A model generated the notes under the pieces. The model ran no database searches. It saw only the letters and a program-made list of their open reading frames with translations, and was not told the DNA's origin. The translations under genes were made by a program, and so were the position numbers. This document shows, in pieces, positions 162 through 17,698 of a DNA stretch of 64,000 nucleotides; within the stretch, counting starts at the first letter, position 1, and the number at the start of each line of letters is the position of its first letter. The DNA lies in IMG/VR virus record IMGVR_UViG_3300042562_001598, positions 218,193 to 282,192 of that record. One strand, given 5' to 3'.

Positions 162-629
162 ATGTTTAGAAACACAAAAAACCCGTTCGTATTATTAAAT
201 GATTTTACTACACCTTTTGGTTCTTTTGACCCATTCACGGTATTACTAGGAGATGTTAAGACTGAAAAAGGTCAAGACGAGAATGGTCAATGGACTTCTC
301 AGACTTACACATCTGAAAATGGTGTTGTTACAGTAAAAAACTTCACTAGAACTTCTAAAAGTCCTAAAAGTAAAACAACTACTAATACAACAACAACTAA
401 CACAACAACTAACACTACTGAGTTAACAACTTTACAAAATGAGTTAACAACAGCTATTGAGACTCAAAACTTTGAACGTGCAGTTGAATTAAGAGACCAA
501 ATTAAAAAATTGGAATCTAATCAAGAAAAAATTGAAACTCTAACTTTAGAATTAGAAACTTCAATTAAAGAACAAAACTTTGAGAAATCAATTAAGTTGA
601 GAGACCAAATTAATAAGTTGACTAAGTAA
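162..629 (+). CDS. Protein with two UvrB/UvrC (UVR) coiled-coil motifs and a Thr/Asn-rich linker
   Basis: LQNELTTAIETQNFERAVELRDQI and LETSIKEQNFEKSIKLRDQI match the UVR pattern A..E.FE.A..LRD.I. Confidence 0.8.
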   Translation: MFRNTKNPFVLLNDFTTPFGSFDPFTVLLGDVKTEKGQDENGQWTSQTYTSENGVVTVKNFTRTSKSPKSKTTTNTTTTNTTTNTTELTTLQNELTTAIETQNFERAVELRDQIKKLESNQEKIETLTLELETSIKEQNFEKSIKLRDQINKLTK

Positions 630-12071: not shown

Positions 12072-13439
12072 ATGGCAAAAGAAAAATCTTTAGTTGAGGA
12101 CGCAATCATCCAAATGAGAAATTTGGAAGAAGCTGTTGCGGAAAATGCAAAAGGAATACTTGCTTCTACAATGAAGGAAGAAATCAAAGAACTAGTAAAA
12201 GAATCTCTGACCGAACAAGAAGACGAGATTGACACAGATGTTGAAATGGATTTACCTACGGATGACGAAGGTGATGAAATGGATATTGATAATATTGACG
12301 ATATGGAAGACGAAGAAGACTTTGATGAGTTTGGTGATGACGAAGACGTTATTGACCTAACTGATATTGAAGACGATTCTGAAATCTTACGTGTATTTAG
12401 TTTATTAGGACCTGAAGATAATGTTATAGTTAAGAAAGACGAGACTGGTAACATTAGCTTAAAAGATGGTGATAAAGAATACATGATTGTTGGTGAAAAC
12501 GAAGACGAAGATGCTGACATGGAAATGTTTGAAGGTTTCGGAGAATTTGAAGACGACGAAGAACAAGAAGAAGACGAACTTTACGAAGAAGATGAATTTT
12601 CAAATGAAGATGAATCTATTGACGATATCGTTTCTAAAGTATTTGGAGAAGGTCAAGACTTTGAGGATAATGAACTTGAAGAAAATGATGAAGAAGTTGT
12701 TTACGAAATTGAAATGGACGACGAAGATTTAATGGATGAAGAAGATGAATATCTTGAGGAATCTAAATCAACAATTAAACCTAAAGGTGTTGGTATGGGT
12801 AAACCAAAATTCTCTTATAATTCTAAACCAAATCAAGGAAAAGGTTTCAACACTAAAATGAAAGAAGCCCCTAAATCTGTTGGAACTGGAAAAGCGAAAT
12901 TTGAATTTAAAGAAGACGAAGATTTTGAAAAAATAGAAACTAAAGAAGCTGCTCGCACTATCGGAAATGGTTCTAAATCAGGTCGTGGTCTTAGAAAAGG
13001 TATTACTCCTAATAGAAACTTGGAATTCCCTATTAAAGAAAATACTGACGCTAAAGAACTACAAATCCTTAGAGAAAAAAACGAAGAGTATAGAAAAGCT
13101 TTAAATATTTTCAGAAATAAATTAAATGAGGTTGCTGTTTTTAACTCAAACTTAGCTTACGCTACTCGTTTATTTACTGAATGTACTACTTCAAAACAAG
13201 AAAAAATAAACATATTGAAAAGATTTGATGGTGTTGAAACGATTAAAGAATCTAAAAACTTATATCAAAGTCTTAAAAATGAATTGTCAGTTAAATCTGG
13301 TAAACCAATCAATGAATCTATTGAGTCTAAATTAGACAAAACACATTCAACTGGTTCTGCCGTTAATTTAATTGAATCAAAAACTTACGAAAATCCACAA
13401 TTCCTTAGAATGAAAGATTTGATGAGTAAATTAAAATAA
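12072..13439 (+). CDS. Prohead scaffold/core protein (gp22-like role)
   Basis: Highly acidic, coiled-coil C-terminus; lies between protease and MCP. Confidence 0.75.
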   Translation: MAKEKSLVEDAIIQMRNLEEAVAENAKGILASTMKEEIKELVKESLTEQEDEIDTDVEMDLPTDDEGDEMDIDNIDDMEDEEDFDEFGDDEDVIDLTDIEDDSEILRVFSLLGPEDNVIVKKDETGNISLKDGDKEYMIVGENEDEDADMEMFEGFGEFEDDEEQEEDELYEEDEFSNEDESIDDIVSKVFGEGQDFEDNELEENDEEVVYEIEMDDEDLMDEEDEYLEESKSTIKPKGVGMGKPKFSYNSKPNQGKGFNTKMKEAPKSVGTGKAKFEFKEDEDFEKIETKEAARTIGNGSKSGRGLRKGITPNRNLEFPIKENTDAKELQILREKNEEYRKALNIFRNKLNEVAVFNSNLAYATRLFTECTTSKQEKINILKRFDGVETIKESKNLYQSLKNELSVKSGKPINESIESKLDKTHSTGSAVNLIESKTYENPQFLRMKDLMSKLK

Positions 13440-13470: not shown

Positions 13471-15315
13471 ATGGGAGCATTATTAGAATCAGGTCTTGTT
13501 GGTAACATCGGACTAAAACACCTTAAAGTTATCAAAGAAGATACTATTAACAAATGGGATAAATTAGGATTCCTAGAAGGTCTTAAAGGACACTTAAGAG
13601 AAAACGTAGCTCAATTATATGAGAACCAAGCGTCTTTCTTGATTAACGAAGCTACTTCAGAAGGTTCATCAGGTTCATTTGAAACTGTTGTATTCCCTAT
13701 CGTAAGAAGAGTTTTCTCAAAATTATTGGCGAATGAAATCGTATCTGTACAAGCAATGAACTTACCAATTGGTAAATTGTTCTTCTTCGTACCTAAAATT
13801 CAAGGTTACAATGGTGGTGTTGAAGGTCAACAATCAGGTGACCACTACGCACCAATAGGTTCTCCAGGAAACTACTCAGGTAGTACAGAAGCTGGATATA
13901 CAGGTGCTGGAGCTTACGCTAAAAATCTTTATGATTTGTTTTATGAAGGTACTGAACCAGGATTGAACCCAGGTGGTTTATTTGATTACTCTAAAGGTAG
14001 ATGGTCAGCTATTACTTCTACAGTAGCTATTCAACAATGGTCTAATGGTAATTTAGTTGACGCTGTAATTTCTGGTACTTCAACAAGTGCTGGTGTTATT
14101 GCTGGAGGTAATACAAGAAAAGTAATTGTAAAACTTTGTGGTTTCCAAGATACTGGAGCTGGTAAATTAATTGGACCTGATGGAAATGAAATGGACACAG
14201 AAACTTTCTTGTCTGATTTAATTATCTACACTGGTTCTGGTTTAACAGTTGCCGCTGGTAGTCCATGTACAGTTTCAACAGGAGCTTTATTGTATAGAGT
14301 TGTTACTCAACAATATGGTCAAGGTATCGTAAATGGTGCTTCAGGAACTAGAACTCAAACTTCTTGGCCAACAAACAACGGTGGTTCATTCCAAAGTCCA
14401 TGTAACGCTAACGGATGTATCTTCTTAGAAGTTGATTTGTCTTGTCCAGCTTGTGCTGATTGTGGTTCTGATTCATTAGATGGATACACTGGAACAACTA
14501 TTTCTACAGGTTTAACTTCATCATCTTTCAACGCTGCTTGGAGACGTTACGAAGAATTAGAATTTGAAGATAAAATCGGTGAGGTTTCATTTGATTTAGA
14601 GTCTGTTACTGTATCTGTTACAGAAAGAAAATTAAGAGCACAATGGTCTCCTGAGTTAGCTCAAGACGTTGCAGCTTTCCATAACATTGATGCTGAAGCA
14701 GAATTAACTGCTTTGTTATCTGAACAAGTTGCGGCAGAGATTGACCGTGAAATCTTAAGAGATTTACGTAAAGGTGCTGCTTGGACTTTGAGATGGGATT
14801 ACAATGGATGGAGAAGAGTAGGAGCTACAACTTCTTATACACAAAAAGACTGGAACCAAACTTTGATTACAGCTATTAACCAATTGTCAGCACAAATTCA
14901 CAAATCTACTTTAAGAGGTGGTGCTAACTGGATTGTAGTTTCTTCTGAGGTTTCTGCTATCTTTGATGACTTAGAGTACTTCCACGTATCTAACGCTTCA
15001 GCTGAACAAGACCAATATAACATGGGTATTGAAAGAGTTGGAACATTAGCTGGTCGTTACCAAGTTTACCGTGACCCTTACTTCCCAGCTAACCAAGTGT
15101 TAATTGGACATAAAGGTACTTCATTGTTAGACACAGGTTATATCTACGCACCATACGTGCCGTTGCAATTAACTCCAACAATGTATAACCCTTTTAACTT
15201 TACTCCAATAAAAGGAATAATGACAAGGTATGCTAAAAAAATGGTAAACAACCGCTTTTACGCCCGAATTACTGTTGATGGTGTTAGAACATTTGATATT
15301 AAAGAATTAAGATAA
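13471..15315 (+). CDS. Major capsid protein (T4 gp23-like) with large insertion
   Basis: PIVRRVF...VSVQAM, RKLRAQWSPELAQD, DAEAEL, EIDREI, YAPYVPL, TRY motifs; strongly biased codon usage. Confidence 0.97.
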   Translation: MGALLESGLVGNIGLKHLKVIKEDTINKWDKLGFLEGLKGHLRENVAQLYENQASFLINEATSEGSSGSFETVVFPIVRRVFSKLLANEIVSVQAMNLPIGKLFFFVPKIQGYNGGVEGQQSGDHYAPIGSPGNYSGSTEAGYTGAGAYAKNLYDLFYEGTEPGLNPGGLFDYSKGRWSAITSTVAIQQWSNGNLVDAVISGTSTSAGVIAGGNTRKVIVKLCGFQDTGAGKLIGPDGNEMDTETFLSDLIIYTGSGLTVAAGSPCTVSTGALLYRVVTQQYGQGIVNGASGTRTQTSWPTNNGGSFQSPCNANGCIFLEVDLSCPACADCGSDSLDGYTGTTISTGLTSSSFNAAWRRYEELEFEDKIGEVSFDLESVTVSVTERKLRAQWSPELAQDVAAFHNIDAEAELTALLSEQVAAEIDREILRDLRKGAAWTLRWDYNGWRRVGATTSYTQKDWNQTLITAINQLSAQIHKSTLRGGANWIVVSSEVSAIFDDLEYFHVSNASAEQDQYNMGIERVGTLAGRYQVYRDPYFPANQVLIGHKGTSLLDTGYIYAPYVPLQLTPTMYNPFNFTPIKGIMTRYAKKMVNNRFYARITVDGVRTFDIKELR

Positions 15316-15337
15316 TCAAATATACTTAATTAAAACT

Positions 15338-15368
15338 AAAGGGACAAGAAATTGTCCCTTTTTTTTTT
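15338..15368. terminator. Terminator between convergent MCP and endonuclease genes
   Basis: AAAGGGACAA-gaaa-TTGTCCCTTT plus long T-run. Confidence 0.85.
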
Positions 15369-16986
15369 ATAATAAAATTTCATATTTTAAATTACCGGTA
15401 TCCCATATTTTATCGTAACCTAATTCAGACATTATTTGAGATTCTGTTTTATTTTTATCATAACCTAACTTAACTAATCTATCTTTTCTATAGTTAAACC
15501 TATGTTCTCTAACATCATATTTTTTAGTATAACTATAATTAGGTTTTGTTTCCCCAATATAATTAAACCCTGTTTTAGAATAAAAACAAAATTCATCTGA
15601 AGGTGACCAATTTCTGTTAGAATATGTTATAATTTTTTTAGGTGAATATTCCTTTATAAAATGTTTTAATAATTTTGTAAATCCACCAACTACATTTACG
15701 GAACAATAACGATATAATTCATATTCATCTATAGTTTTATTTTTATTACCTAAAATTTTTCTTAATGAACCAAATGACATAACGGCAACAATAATATCAT
15801 TATGTTTTAGACCAAAGTATATTGTTGATTTATCATTACCTTGTAAATGGTTAGTCTTAAGAAAATTACTTTTTTCATCACTACTTATAGTTGTTATTTC
15901 ACAATTTCTCGCATAAATTTTAGTATTATTTTTCTTCAATAAATTAGTAATTCTATTTTTTACTATATTTTTCTTTGTTAACCATTCGTCAGAAAAAATA
16001 TGAATTAATTGAATGTTTTTTTCAAGACATTTTAATGTTTTATCTATATGATAATTTTTATGTTTCCCCCTATTTTCTGAGTGCCAATATAATCCATTAT
16101 ATTCTATAGCTATATTATAATCAGGAAAATACAAATCTAATTCAACACCATTTAATTGTTTCTTATCACAAACTTTAACATCAACACCTAATGATTTAAC
16201 ATATTCCTCAATTTCTTTTTCAGATTTACTTCTGTAGTAAAAATTAGTTTCACATTTTAATAAATTAGATACAAATGTGTCTTTTGTTTTTTTAGAAATT
16301 AAAGAGTTTTCGCCAAATTTATTTTTATATTCCTCGGTTGTTATATTATGTGATGACAAATGAGTGTTAGATAACATTTTAAATTGTTCGTCACATAATT
16401 CACAAGTGACATAATTATCTGTTTCATTAAATAACACATCTCTGTCAATAGAATTTGATAACGTTGTGAATAGTTTAAGTTCTGAAGGGAATTTTAACAC
16501 ATAATCACTAATTGAGTTGTGTGCGTTTTCAATATGTTTAGATAACGCCCCGGATTTATTAACAATATCTTTGGTGACCCATCCACATTCTAAACATTTT
16601 ATTGTTGTTGATTCCGGTTTAGTGATTAAATTAAAGTAAGTAAAATGCCAATAATTCCCAGTATCCGTTAAATACATTCTTCTTTTGAATGAAGATGGGA
16701 TAACTTCATTAGGGTAACATTTTTTAATATGATTAGTTACTCCACCACTTTTATTTTCAATGTCATCATATTCTTTACCACAACACTTACAAGATAGTAT
16801 AATATTTTTATTATCTAACTCAATCTTTTTGACCTGTTTATGTTTGATTTGACCACCTTTAGTTTTTAATGGTATGTTATTACTTAATAAAATTTTTTTA
16901 ATTTTAAGTTTACCAACCTTAAATTCTTTAGCCAAGGTCTCAATAGAGACATTATCTTTATACTTTTCAATTATTATATCTTCCAT
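15367..16986 (-). mobile_element. Free-standing Hef-like homing endonuclease with C2H2-type zinc fingers
   Basis: Three CxxC...H fingers; S..EKE, ELDLY, AIEYNGLYWHS, HIFSDEW, KIYAR.C, NHLQG, KIWDTG motifs; oriented opposite to flanking genes. Confidence 0.85.
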
Positions 16987-16993
16987 AAATATA

Positions 16994-17021
16994 ATTATAC
17001 CTAAAAAAGGAATGGAGTCAA
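16994..17021 (-). promoter_or_regulatory. sigma70-like promoter for the endonuclease
   Basis: Minus strand TTGACT-N16-TATAAT, 7 nt upstream of the ATG. Confidence 0.45.
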
Positions 17022-17104: not shown

Positions 17105-17698
17105 ATGAAAAATTTATATTCCTTAAATGATGAGGAAAAACAGAGAATATTAAATCTTCACGAGAATGCAACAAAACGTCAATATTTGGGAGAACAATTA
17201 ACTGATGAAACTGGTAAATATACTCCAGTATATAAACCTGAAGTTGGTCCTGATACTCAAGTAGATGCTAGTAAGAAATTTACCCCAGCGGCAATGGCTT
17301 GTATTAAACAATTTGGTGAATATAAACCGGCTAAAACACCTGGTTTTGTTCAGGTTGAAACAGATAAAGCCACTGTATTCTTTAGTAAAGATTATGAAGT
17401 TAGATATCGACCAACCGGTGGTGAAATTATAAAGGGTCAATGGTCTTGTATGAGTAATGTTTTTAATATTAATCTAAACGATGATTCAACTTGGTCAAGG
17501 GCTCAAGGTGGTTGGAAGAATCCGACAATTAATACTAAACCTCAAGTTAAAATAAATCCGGTTTTACAACAAACAATGACGATTAATAAACAAATTCAAC
17601 AAAAACTTGGATTAAAACAAACAGGTAAATTAACTCATAATGAATTGGAAGTTCTAATTAAAACATTAACACCTAACGCTACACCAACTCAACAATAA
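17105..17698 (+). CDS. Hypothetical virion protein with possible C-terminal peptidoglycan-binding helix motif
   Basis: N-terminal EEKQRILNLHE leader; C-terminal IQQKLGLKQTGKL. Confidence 0.55.
   Translation: MKNLYSLNDEEKQRILNLHENATKRQYLGEQLTDETGKYTPVYKPEVGPDTQVDASKKFTPAAMACIKQFGEYKPAKTPGFVQVETDKATVFFSKDYEVRYRPTGGEIIKGQWSCMSNVFNINLNDDSTWSRAQGGWKNPTINTKPQVKINPVLQQTMTINKQIQQKLGLKQTGKLTHNELEVLIKTLTPNATPTQQ

What the first reader, a model, noticed from the sequence alone, without database searches (positions are those of the whole stretch)
15157..16986. Recoded 3' end of the capsid gene next to a free-standing homing endonuclease
Seen: by eye, all Arg codons in the first ~560 MCP codons are AGA or CGT, but 15157-15267 abruptly uses AGG, CGC, CGA, CCG, GTG and two ATA while keeping the conserved YAPYVPL...TRY protein. 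The Hef-like endonuclease is about 100 bp downstream. Known: free-standing phage endonucleases cut a neighbouring conserved gene in competitors while their own allele is resistant (intronless homing). Inference: this patch is the immunised target site.
Basis: partly seen in the sequence, partly recalled or inferred. Interest (0 to 1): 0.6.

Follow-up and report, generated by a model that had tools for sequence, protein, structure and literature searches.

The report
Nuclease-linked recoded end of capsid gene
The last ~50 codons of this phage's major capsid gene are rewritten with unusual synonymous codons, and in about 150 related phages this rewriting goes with a mobile nuclease gene parked just downstream; this is the expected trace of "intronless homing", a known kind of selfish-gene behaviour.

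Summary
AGG, CGC, CGA and CCG each occur once in the 614-codon capsid gene, all within 15157-15267. Eight rare codons fall in 37 codons (permutation p about 1e-4 to 3e-3).

The patch is not private to this phage. In about 150 relatives, codons ~560-606 have the most rare codons and the highest synonymous diversity in the gene, although the protein there is ~99% conserved.

The excess tracks the gene just after the capsid terminator. Relatives carry one of three free-standing nucleases there:
- a Hef-like gene on the minus strand (as here);
- a distant Hef-like gene on the plus strand;
- an HNH gene.

Alleles next to a nuclease carry 6-7 rare codons in the patch; alleles without one carry 3.6. 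This holds in phylogenetically independent pairs and in a second data set.

Each nuclease type has its own recoded block of ~16 codons: 572-587 for the window's type, 585-601 for the other two. The window carries its own block plus part of the second.

The best reading is a homing-linked tract that probably holds the cut-resistant target. Cleavage and immunity remain untested. This matches T4 mobE/nrdB, segF/56 and segG/32, and segD occupies the same slot in T4. I rate it a new member of a known kind, of moderate interest.

The parts
13471..15315 (+). Major capsid protein gene (T4 gp23 family), 614 codons, strongly codon-biased
   Evidence: Pfam PF07068 E 4e-74 and phrog_138 E 1.6e-66; codon tally
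15157..15267 (+). The flagged rare-codon patch (codons 563-599). It lies inside the family-wide hot spot of synonymous diversity and rare codons (codons ~560-606, 15148-15288).
   Evidence: Permutation p 1.5e-4 to 3e-3; family profile; close-pair divergence spike
15184..15231 (+). Block 1, codons 572-587: the signature shared by alleles next to a minus-strand Hef-like gene (TAT572, TTT575, ACT578, CCA579, ATA580, GGA582, ATA583, AGG586, TAT587). This is the predicted recognition or immunity region of the window's own nuclease.
   Evidence: The core codons (TAT572, ACT578, ATA580, GGA582, ATA583) are in all six such alleles and the others in four or five. Per-site association. The consensus differs from the nuclease-less consensus at 11 of 15 degenerate codons. 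The five independent alleles form one clade on the 3'-end tree.
15235..15273 (+). Block 2, codons 589-601 (AAA589, GTA592, CGC595, TTT596, GCC598, CGA599, ATT600, ACT601). It resembles the 'B' haplotype that in relatives is linked to the HNH gene and to the plus-strand Hef-like gene, not to the window's HEG type.
   Evidence: CGC595 occurs in 18 of 52 nuclease-adjacent alleles against 4 of 74 nuclease-less ones (p 3e-5).
15338..15361 (.). G+C-rich hairpin followed by a T-run on the + strand: the MCP terminator, which is also a terminator-like hairpin on the minus strand for the HEG. It is present in all relatives. The HEG cassette begins directly after its T-run.
   Evidence: terminator-like on both strands; comparison of junctions
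15367..16986 (-). Free-standing Hef-like endonuclease gene, 539 aa, intact, convergent with the MCP. The cassette is inserted between the MCP terminator and the promoter region of the next gene (which starts at 17105).
   Evidence: phrog_3339 'homing endonuclease' E 2e-101; annotated Hef-like relatives in Campylobacter, Bacillus AR9 and Dickeya phages; absent from most relatives at this locus
15913..16254 (-). Nuclease domain (residues 245-358), Vsr-like PD-(D/E)XK fold of the I-Bth0305I ('EDxHD') type
   Evidence: AF2 model pLDDT 84. Foldseek top hits are 3r3p I-Bth0305I (TM 0.65/0.75, 23% id) and then Vsr 1cw0/1vsr. Weak Pfam MTES_1575 and PvuRts1I_N hits and an NCBIfam Vsr hit fall in the same residues. 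Invariant E/D/H columns.
15370..15909 (-). C-terminal GNAT-fold, Mom-like domain (residues ~360-539)
   Evidence: The Foldseek top hit of the full model is phage Mu Mom 8bv8 (E 2e-6), followed by many GNATs. The paralog L082:799-2379 (41% id over this part) hits Pfam Mom PF25680 at 33 bits against a cut-off of 27.1. The window's own copy has no Pfam hit.
16994..17021 (-). Sigma-70-like promoter (TTGACT-16-TATAAT, 11 of 12) just upstream of the HEG start codon
   Evidence: consensus match only

Best explanation
The 3' end of the capsid gene is the footprint of intronless homing at a contested insertion slot.

Shown: the short intergenic slot right after the MCP terminator is occupied, in different relatives, by one of three unrelated or distantly related free-standing nuclease genes, or by none.

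Inferred: during mixed infection the nuclease cuts the highly conserved 3' end of the capsid gene of a competitor that lacks it. Repair copies the nuclease gene, together with the adjoining MCP 3' tract, from the carrier genome.

The carrier's tract differs from the nuclease-less ('canonical', codon-optimal) allele at about three quarters of all possible synonymous positions within a block of ~16 codons (~48 bp). That is the size of a homing-endonuclease recognition site. Because the protein cannot change, the target can only be altered through non-preferred codons. Drive, together with selection against self-cleavage, overrides the weak selection for optimal codons. Hence the rare codons.

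In this window, block 572-587 (15184-15231) is the signature of its own minus-strand Hef-like gene. Block 589-601 (15235-15273) resembles the allele linked to the HNH and plus-strand Hef-like genes. This suggests an earlier encounter with, or resistance to, those rivals.

Shown: the clustering, the association with nuclease genes, the block structure, the phylogenetic discordance and the insertion anatomy. Inferred: that cleavage occurs inside these blocks and that the changes reduce it.
For: 1. Clustering in the window: p 1.5e-4 to 3e-3.
2. Local spike: pairs that are 0-5% diverged over codons 361-555 jump to 17-23% divergence, nearly all of it synonymous, in codons ~572-606. Family-wide, this window has the top synonymous heterozygosity (0.91 of expectation against 0.6-0.8) and the top rare-codon frequency, at 99% amino-acid conservation.
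3. Three nucleases use the slot: Hef-like minus, Hef-like plus (38-41% identical to the former), and HNH with an HVDH...NLQPxW...N motif.
4. Rare codons in codons 559-600: Hef-minus 7.0, HNH 6.35, Hef-plus about 5.2, none 3.57 (Mann-Whitney p 2e-7). In 13 phylogenetically independent pairs about 8 go the same way and 0 the other way, p about 0.008. Replicated in 71 non-duplicate metagenome loci: HNH 7.67 against none 3.68, p 1.3e-4.
5. Each of the window's 8 rare codons is more frequent in nuclease-adjacent than in nuclease-less alleles.
6. Block structure: the group consensus differs from the nuclease-less consensus at 12/16 (HNH) and 12/15 (Hef-plus) degenerate codons in 585-601, and at 11/15 (Hef-minus) in 572-587. 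In control codons 480-555 the figures are 3/74, 8/74 and 16/73.
7. The core of the signature, ACT578-(CCA579)-ATA580-AAA581-GGA582-ATA583-ATG-ACA585, is shared by all six Hef-minus alleles, whose HEGs are only 56-74% identical to the window's (the near-duplicate L086 aside). The stretch nearer the HEG (588-603) is less alike: codon identity 0.48 against 0.79. This argues for retention by selection rather than plain linkage.
8. On the backbone tree (codons 361-555) the five independent Hef-minus alleles are scattered (5 changes). On the 3'-end tree (556-614) they form one clade, SH-aLRT 92.
9. The cassette boundaries are clean: terminator, then HEG, then the promoter region of the next gene. 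Nuclease-less relatives join terminator to next gene directly.
10. Precedent: polymorphisms at the MobE nicking site in nrdB separate mobE+ from mobE- phages and were proposed to prevent self-nicking (PMC2790892). Co-conversion and marker exclusion are established (PMC2988022). T4 segD sits between genes 23 and 24 in the opposite orientation (PMC2988022).
Against: - No cleavage data exist, so the cut site could lie elsewhere (for example in the invariant last 8-13 codons or the intergenic hairpin), with the blocks being only linked markers.
- Nuclease-less alleles also show about 3-fold rare-codon enrichment here, owing to three conserved rare codons (CCG561, CTA565, AAG589) that this model does not explain.
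- Some nuclease-less alleles carry fully recoded blocks (L061, L073, L060). This needs loss of the nuclease or recombination to explain.
- The association for the plus-strand Hef-like gene is weak and did not replicate (values 1, 1, 5, 7).
- There are only five independent alleles of the window's HEG type.
- The AU test does not significantly reject their monophyly on the backbone (p 0.16).
- Metagenome contigs can be chimeric within conserved stretches. That would inflate backbone discordance, though not the short-range linkage between patch and nuclease.
- From memory of Sandegren et al. 2005 (paper not held): U5 Hef cut its own DNA as well in vitro, which would argue against sequence-based immunity for this family.
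- The rare-codon count near the second Hef-like copy in the same genome is not clearly raised.
Confidence: 0.6

Rival explanations
1. Pure hitch-hiking. The recoded blocks are only co-conversion tracts that travel with the nuclease genes (genetic draft) and have no effect on cleavage. The carrier protects itself in another way, for example DNA modification by the Mom-like domain or another genome-wide modification, or it tolerates self-cleavage.
For: Co-conversion of flanks is obligatory in homing (PMC2988022). The 3'-end tree follows the nuclease type. The codon usage of the patch resembles the genomic background rather than any special set. The enzyme has a Mom-like GNAT domain, and Mom-REase fusions in jumbo phages were predicted to protect self DNA by modification (PMC7824862). 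Recoded blocks also occur in some nuclease-less alleles.
Against: Differences reach 73-80% of degenerate codons inside 16-codon blocks. That exceeds the roughly 45-48% expected even for independent draws from the family's codon usage (p 0.006-0.04), while control regions differ at 4-22%. In Hef-minus alleles the conserved signature block lies further from the HEG than a less conserved stretch, which is not the monotonic decay that simple linkage predicts. Different nucleases have different blocks.
Confidence: 0.25
2. A conserved rare-codon cluster near the C-terminus slows translation to aid folding or assembly of the capsid protein, independently of the nucleases.
For: Enrichment is family-wide, and three rare codons (CCG561 in 67 of 80 relatives, CTA565 in 38 of 80, AAG589 in 41 of 80) are position-specifically conserved even without a nuclease.
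Against: It does not explain why the count doubles next to a nuclease gene. It does not explain why the rare codons sit at different positions in different nuclease groups. It does not explain why synonymous diversity, rather than conservation, peaks here.
Confidence: 0.05
3. A functional RNA or DNA element (mRNA structure, regulatory site) overlaps the coding sequence and constrains third positions.
For: Third-position choices are non-random, and the region lies just upstream of the terminator.
Against: The RNAalifold consensus over 47 sequences is -3.7 kcal/mol with almost no covariation. The window's own fold has z = 0.10 against shuffles. No alternative-frame ORF of 40 aa or more overlaps the patch.
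Confidence: 0.02
4. Chance, an assembly chimera, or gene conversion from a gp24-like paralog.
For: Metagenomic contigs can be chimeric, and T4-like phages often have an MCP paralog.
Against: Permutation p is 3e-3 or lower. Identical sequence over 5.7 kb was assembled from two other metagenomes (L084 and L085). No second MCP-like gene is detectable in the 282-kb genome. The result replicates across about 150 loci.
Confidence: 0.03

Closest known systems
T4 mobE / nrdB (HNH free-standing endonuclease; Wilson & Edgell 2009, PMC2790892)
   Same: A free-standing nuclease sits next to a conserved essential gene. A short polymorphic stretch in that gene separates carrier phages from non-carriers and was proposed to prevent self-nicking. 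Flanking markers are co-converted.
   Different: Here the target gene is the major capsid gene and the nuclease families differ. Nothing has been tested biochemically. The evidence is population-scale (about 150 uncultured relatives) and shows several nucleases with separate blocks.
T4 segF/gene 56 and segG/gene 32 intronless homing and marker exclusion (reviewed in PMC2988022)
   Same: The mechanism proposed here: cleavage in a neighbouring gene of the nuclease-less phage, repair from the carrier, and localized exclusion of the competitor's markers.
   Different: Those are GIY-YIG enzymes, shown by crosses and cleavage mapping. Here there is only sequence inference.
T4 segD between genes 23 and 24 (PMC2988022)
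   Same: The same slot, directly downstream of the gp23 capsid gene, and the same unusual opposite orientation between terminators.
   Different: segD is a GIY-YIG gene with no promoter of its own and, in that 2010 review, an unknown target. The window's gene is Hef-like with a strong sigma-70-like promoter match.
Hef of phage U5 and the 'Hef-like' genes of Campylobacter, ViI-like, AR9 and other large phages (PMC3296691, PMC2988022)
   Same: The window's protein matches the PHROG and the annotated proteins of this group. These genes are multi-copy and sit next to structural genes (tail tube, baseplate), as the window's genome also shows.
   Different: A direct comparison with U5 Hef was not possible. 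The domain make-up found here (Vsr/EDxHD-like nuclease plus Mom-like GNAT) is not stated in the papers I could read on Hef-like genes.
I-Bth0305I (EDxHD family, PDB 3r3p) and Vsr
   Same: Best structural matches of the nuclease domain.
   Different: I-Bth0305I is intron-encoded. Identity is about 23% and the Foldseek E-value is only 2e-3.
Mom-REase fusions of jumbo phages (Iyer et al. 2021, PMC7824862)
   Same: A Mom-family GNAT domain fused to a restriction-endonuclease-fold domain in a jumbo phage.
   Different: That paper reads them as restriction-modification-like weapons. Here the gene shows the presence/absence pattern, the multiple orientations and the flank linkage of a homing element.
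Nuclease genes at boundaries of genetic exchange (Barth et al. 2023, PMC10448857)
   Same: HEGs sit next to capsid and other essential genes and mark recombination boundaries between related phages.
   Different: That study covers other nuclease families (T5orf172, IPA-HNH) and, by the terms I searched, has no analysis of synonymous codons or target recoding.

Membership tests
Free-standing homing endonuclease system (intronless homing) | Nuclease gene lies free-standing between conserved genes, outside any intron or intein | tested here: met
   ORF 15367-16986 lies between the MCP terminator and the next gene's promoter region
Free-standing homing endonuclease system (intronless homing) | Sporadic presence or absence at the same locus among close relatives | tested here: met
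   At least 18 changes of nuclease adjacency on the MCP tree; many relatives join the MCP directly to the next gene
Free-standing homing endonuclease system (intronless homing) | Flanking sequence is co-inherited with the nuclease gene (co-conversion) | tested here: met
   The 3'-end tree groups the Hef-minus alleles (SH-aLRT 92) while the backbone tree scatters them. Close-pair divergence spikes. This is indirect: no crosses.
Free-standing homing endonuclease system (intronless homing) | Site-specific cleavage of the nuclease-less allele close to the insertion site | not testable with these tools
   Needs enzyme assays. Predicted regions are 15184-15231 (own type) and 15223-15273 (HNH and Hef-plus types).
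Free-standing homing endonuclease system (intronless homing) | The carrier's own allele is cut poorly | not testable with these tools
   Only the polymorphism pattern is consistent with this
Hef-like endonucleases (phrog_3339) | Full-length sequence similarity to the family profile and to annotated members | tested here: met
   phrog_3339 E 2.3e-101 over residues 26-536; tblastn hits of 31-38% identity to annotated Hef-like genes
Hef-like endonucleases (phrog_3339) | Homology to the founding protein, Hef of phage U5 | not tested
   No U5 Hef sequence or paper was available
EDxHD / Vsr-like PD-(D/E)XK nucleases | Vsr-like fold with conserved acidic and His residues | tested here: met
   Model pLDDT 84. 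Top PDB hits are I-Bth0305I (TM 0.65/0.75) and Vsr. Invariant E12, E14, E38, D40, E51, H58, H69, D89 and E90 in the 14-sequence domain alignment. The Pfam and NCBIfam hits are below their curated cut-offs.
Mom family (GNAT) DNA-modifying domain | Match to Pfam PF25680 above the gathering score | tested here: inconclusive
   The window's copy has no Pfam hit. Its paralog in the same genome scores 33.0 against a cut-off of 27.1. The fold search puts Mu Mom first.
Mom family (GNAT) DNA-modifying domain | Adenine modification of DNA | not testable with these tools
   Needs nucleoside analysis or kinetic or nanopore signals
T4 gp23-type major capsid protein | Match to Pfam Gp23 above the gathering score | tested here: met
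   250.7 bits against a cut-off of 24.4

The most novel reading that the evidence does not exclude
Hef-like genes may be self-contained mobile 'cut-and-protect' elements. The Vsr/EDxHD-like domain would cut the competitor's capsid gene, while the fused Mom-like GNAT domain would chemically mark adenines at or near the same site in the carrier. The recoded 16-codon blocks would then be the product of a multi-party arms race among at least three nuclease lineages for one slot, strong enough to override codon optimisation in the most highly expressed gene of the phage.
Probability: 0.12. Interest if true: 0.8.

Novelty: new member of a known kind. Interest (0 to 1): 0.5.

Why it matters
If the blocks are the recognition sites, metagenomes alone would give a base-resolution prediction of the targets and resistant alleles of three uncharacterised nucleases (a Hef-like pair and an HNH enzyme). 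A few cleavage assays could test this.

The finding also suggests that selfish nuclease drive can visibly degrade codon optimisation in the most highly expressed phage gene. The site after the capsid gene would be a conserved battleground from T4 (segD) to uncultured freshwater jumbo phages.

The Vsr-like plus Mom-like architecture gives the poorly characterised Hef-like group a concrete biochemical hypothesis.

For annotation pipelines, short patches of odd codons at the ends of conserved phage genes could serve as a flag for present or past homing elements.

Tried and rejected
- RNA structure in the patch: the consensus fold is negligible and the single-sequence z-score is 0.10. Rejected.
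- Overlapping ORF: none of 40 aa or more.
- Gene conversion from an MCP paralog: no second MCP-like gene in the genome.
- Target-site duplication or a repeat of the MCP end beyond the HEG: none.
- GenBank phages: no close nucleotide relatives, only a 99-nt match to Flavobacterium phages.
- Closer nuclease-less relatives: an exact-word search found only identical contigs or contigs that end before the patch.
- Second Hef-like copy in the same genome (between gp19-like and baseplate genes): the rare-codon pattern in its neighbours is not clearly clustered. Inconclusive.
- Distant lineage L090 (MCP 42% identical, two Hef-like copies convergent on the MCP end): own-rare codons peak at the homologous place, but p is only 0.05-0.12, so this is suggestive only.
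- Remnants of nuclease genes in 'nuclease-less' loci: none. Four 'unknown' loci turned out to carry truncated HNH genes.
- Sandegren et al. 2005 (Hef) is not held. What I say about it rests on memory.
- The big protein searches were not needed.
Full report
**Anatomy.** The window belongs to a 282-kb, 30% G+C, about 96% complete virus record.
- Window 13471-15315 (+) encodes a 614-aa T4 gp23-type major capsid protein (MCP) (Pfam Gp23, E 4e-74).
- Fifty-one bases after its stop codon, on the opposite strand, ends a 539-aa ORF (15367-16986). It matches PHROG 3339 'homing endonuclease' (E 2e-101) and the genes annotated 'Hef-like homing endonuclease' in Campylobacter, Bacillus AR9/PBS1 and Dickeya phages.
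- A G+C-rich hairpin with a T-run (15338-15361) lies between the two genes and scores as a terminator on both strands.
- A TTGACT-16-TATAAT promoter match (17021-16994, minus strand) precedes the endonuclease gene.
- In relatives without the gene, the same hairpin is followed within about 100 nt by the homolog of the next window gene (17105-17698). The endonuclease gene is therefore a clean ~1.7-kb cassette between terminator and next promoter.

- AGG (codon 586), CGC (595), CGA (599) and CCG (564) each occur once in the gene.
- GTG563 is one of two, ATA580 and ATA583 are two of three, and GCC598 is one of two. All other Arg codons are AGA or CGT.
- Shuffling synonymous codons within amino acids reproduced eight rare codons in 37 codons in 3 of 20000 trials (family-defined rare set) or 58 of 20000 (own-usage set).
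- These codons are rare relative to the strongly biased MCP. Genome-wide, ATA, TAT, TTT, AGG and CCG are ordinary, and only CGC is truly rare. In the patch the MCP falls back towards background codon usage.

**The patch is a family-wide feature.** I fetched 80 relatives from IMG/VR (74-86% amino-acid identity) and built a codon alignment.
- The 40-codon window 561-600 has the highest rare-codon frequency of the gene (0.13 against 0.01-0.04 over most of it; the only other rise, 0.05-0.09, is in the first ~70 codons).
- It also has the highest synonymous heterozygosity (0.91 of the expectation from codon usage, against 0.6-0.8), although the protein there is 99% conserved.
- For example, 118 of the 158 CCG codons in all these genes sit at four positions of this stretch, and 18 of 20 CGC codons lie here.
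- In pairs that are 0-5% diverged over codons 361-555, divergence jumps to 17-23% in codons ~572-606, nearly all of it synonymous, and then falls again in the last ~8 codons.

**The slot downstream of the MCP is contested by three nucleases.** Clustering the ORFs in the 3 kb after the MCP showed a mosaic region.
- The window's type is Hef-like on the minus strand. It occurs in the window, L086, L004, L048, L087 and L088, with HEG identity of 56-99%.
- A second Hef-like lineage, 38-41% identical, sits on the plus strand in 9 IMG/VR loci and 4 metagenome loci.
- A 226-252-aa protein sits about 100 nt after the MCP stop in 27 IMG/VR loci and 12 metagenome loci. It has an N-terminal helix-turn-helix-like region and a C-terminal HVDH...NLQPxW...N motif, so it is an HNH endonuclease (phrog_1035, E 4.5e-11).
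- On a tree of MCP codons 1-545, nuclease adjacency needs 18 changes, so these genes come and go.
- A phage whose MCP is only 42% identical (L090) also has Hef-like copies convergent on its MCP end.
- In T4 itself the GIY-YIG gene segD occupies the 23/24 slot in the opposite orientation (PMC2988022).

**Rare codons go with the nucleases.**
- In codons 559-600, alleles next to a nuclease carry more family-rare codons: Hef-minus 7.0, HNH 6.35, Hef-plus about 5.2. Nuclease-less alleles with at least 900 nt of downstream sequence carry 3.57 (Mann-Whitney p 2e-7).
- In 13 phylogenetically independent pairs, about 8 go the same way and none the other way (p about 0.008).
- In a second set of 71 non-duplicate metagenome loci, the HNH-linked alleles have 7.67 against 3.68 (p 1.3e-4). 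The four Hef-plus alleles were mixed.
- Four loci first classed 'unknown' carry HNH genes cut by the contig end, and they have 5-7 rare codons.
- Each of the window's eight rare codons is more frequent among nuclease-adjacent than nuclease-less alleles. For CGC595 the figures are 18 of 52 against 4 of 74.

**Block structure.** Nuclease-less alleles mostly share a near-optimal 'canonical' haplotype.
- HNH-linked and Hef-plus-linked alleles share a different one in codons 585-601. Their consensus differs from the canonical one at 12 of 16 and 12 of 15 degenerate codons.
- Independent draws from the family's codon usage would give about 7, and the control codons 480-555 differ at 3 of 74 and 8 of 74.
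- Hef-minus alleles are canonical-like in most of 588-597 but differ at 11 of 15 degenerate codons in 572-587.
- The core ACT578-(CCA579)-ATA580-AAA581-GGA582-ATA583-ATG-ACA585 is shared by all six Hef-minus alleles, with AGG586 in four of them and CGA in one, and TAT587 in five. Their endonucleases are only 56-74% identical to the window's (the near-duplicate L086 aside).
- The stretch between this block and the HEG is less alike: codon identity 0.48 against 0.79.
- On a tree of codons 556-614 the five independent Hef-minus alleles form one clade (SH-aLRT 92). On the backbone tree of codons 361-555 they are scattered. The AU test does not formally reject monophyly there (p 0.16).
- The window is therefore a composite. 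Block 15184-15231 is its own HEG's signature. Block 15235-15273 (GTA592, CGC595, TTT596, ATT600, ACT601) matches the HNH/Hef-plus haplotype, and GCC598 and CGA599 recur elsewhere mainly in HNH-linked alleles. GTG563-CCG564-TTG565 are shared only with its near-twin L086.

**Interpretation.** The pattern is what intronless homing predicts: a nuclease gene next to a conserved gene, sporadic distribution, a flank that travels with the nuclease, and a short heavily polymorphic stretch separating carriers from non-carriers.
- The same contrast was drawn for mobE+ and mobE- phages at the MobE nicking site in nrdB, and it was read there as protection of the carrier (PMC2790892).
- Co-conversion and marker exclusion are established for T4 Seg and Mob enzymes (PMC2988022).
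- HEGs at recombination boundaries near capsid genes have been described (PMC10448857).
- Three things argue that the blocks are more than passive passengers. They are about 48 bp long, the size of a recognition site. They differ at more positions than saturation under codon bias would give. In the Hef-minus group the conserved block lies further from the HEG than a less conserved stretch.
- None of this shows cleavage. I put 0.6 on 'homing-linked tract that contains the resistant target' and 0.25 on pure hitch-hiking.

**What the enzyme is.**
- The full-length model (pLDDT 70) has a C-terminal GNAT fold whose best PDB match is phage Mu Mom (8bv8, E 2e-6).
- The paralog elsewhere in the same genome lies between a gp19-like and a baseplate gene and hits Pfam Mom above its gathering score.
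- The middle domain, modelled alone (pLDDT 84), best matches the catalytic domain of the homing endonuclease I-Bth0305I and then Vsr. This agrees with weak Vsr, MTES_1575 and PvuRts1I hits.
- The N-terminus has a helical module and Cys/His modules (ROS_MUCR hit).
- Mom-REase fusions in jumbo phages were noted before and read as modification-plus-restriction (PMC7824862). That leaves open that the carrier is protected by modification rather than by sequence.
- From memory, U5 Hef was reported to cut its own DNA in vitro. I could not check the paper.

**Rivals tested.**
- RNA structure: none.
- Overlapping ORF: none.
- MCP paralog: none.
- Repeats or duplication: none.
- A translation-pause cluster could explain the three rare codons conserved even in nuclease-less alleles (CCG561, CTA565, AAG589). 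These remain unexplained. It cannot explain the nuclease association or the group-specific positions.

**Caveats.**
- All relatives are metagenomic contigs. Chimeric assembly in conserved stretches could inflate backbone discordance, though not the linkage between patch and nuclease, which lie within 250 bp.
- The window's own sequence was assembled identically from two other samples.
- There are only five independent alleles of the window's HEG type.
- The Hef-plus association is weak.
- The read-level test could not be run.

**Verdict.** This is a well-documented new instance of a known phenomenon. It has two features worth a bench test: block-wise recoding by several competing nucleases at the capsid gene's end, and the Vsr-like plus Mom-like make-up of Hef-like genes.

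Noticed in passing
window 15370-15909 (-); L082:799-2379: The C-terminal third of the Hef-like protein has a GNAT fold closest to phage Mu Mom. The paralog in the same genome hits Pfam Mom (PF25680) above its cut-off. Hef-like 'homing endonucleases' thus look like Mom-REase fusions.
   Followed up: partly
L036:5936-6616 and 38 other loci (e.g. L054:5863-6621): An HNH endonuclease of 226-252 aa (HVDH...NLQPxW...N motif, N-terminal HTH-like region; phrog_1035 'endonuclease VII') sits about 100 nt after the MCP stop in many relatives. It shows the strongest link to recoding of MCP codons 585-600.
   Followed up: yes
L016, L023, L026, L029, L034, L039, L043, L057, L058: A second Hef-like lineage (38-41% identical) occupies the same slot on the plus strand. 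It shares the recoded haplotype of codons 585-601 with the HNH-linked alleles.
   Followed up: partly
L090:3001-6621: A distant T4-like phage (MCP 42% identical) carries two tandem Hef-like copies convergent on its MCP 3' end. Its own rare codons peak at the homologous place (p 0.05-0.12).
   Followed up: partly
G000:C1:18557-20137 (L082:799-2379): A second Hef-like gene in the same genome lies between a gp19-like tail-tube gene and a T4 baseplate-protein gene. No clear rare-codon cluster appears in those neighbours.
   Followed up: partly
MCP codons 561, 565, 589 (window 15151-15153, 15163-15165, 15235-15237 in relatives): CCG561, CTA565 and AAG589 are rare codons conserved in most nuclease-less relatives (67, 38 and 41 of 80). 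The window itself has CCA, TTG and AAA there. No explanation found.
   Followed up: no
L073:6023-8593, L044:6015-8066: Relatives carry large proteins downstream of the MCP with GEVED, SprB and Por_Secre_tail (T9SS sorting) domains and a subtilase. Together with a 99-nt DNA match to Flavobacterium phages, this points to Bacteroidota hosts.
   Followed up: no
window 12072-13439 (+): The gene upstream of the MCP encodes a 455-aa protein with long Asp/Glu-rich runs and no family hit. By position it may be a scaffold or prohead-core protein.
   Followed up: no
MCP codons ~106-350 (window ~13786-14520): The middle of the MCP (probably the insertion domain) is highly variable and mosaic among relatives (20-55% nucleotide divergence even in pairs close elsewhere). 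This is a second, separate recombination or diversification zone.
   Followed up: no
L084, L085 (IMG/VR 3300033984, 3300042888): Contigs from two other metagenomes are 100% identical to the window over 5.7 kb including the MCP end and the HEG. L086 is 96% identical and carries the same patch.
   Followed up: yes
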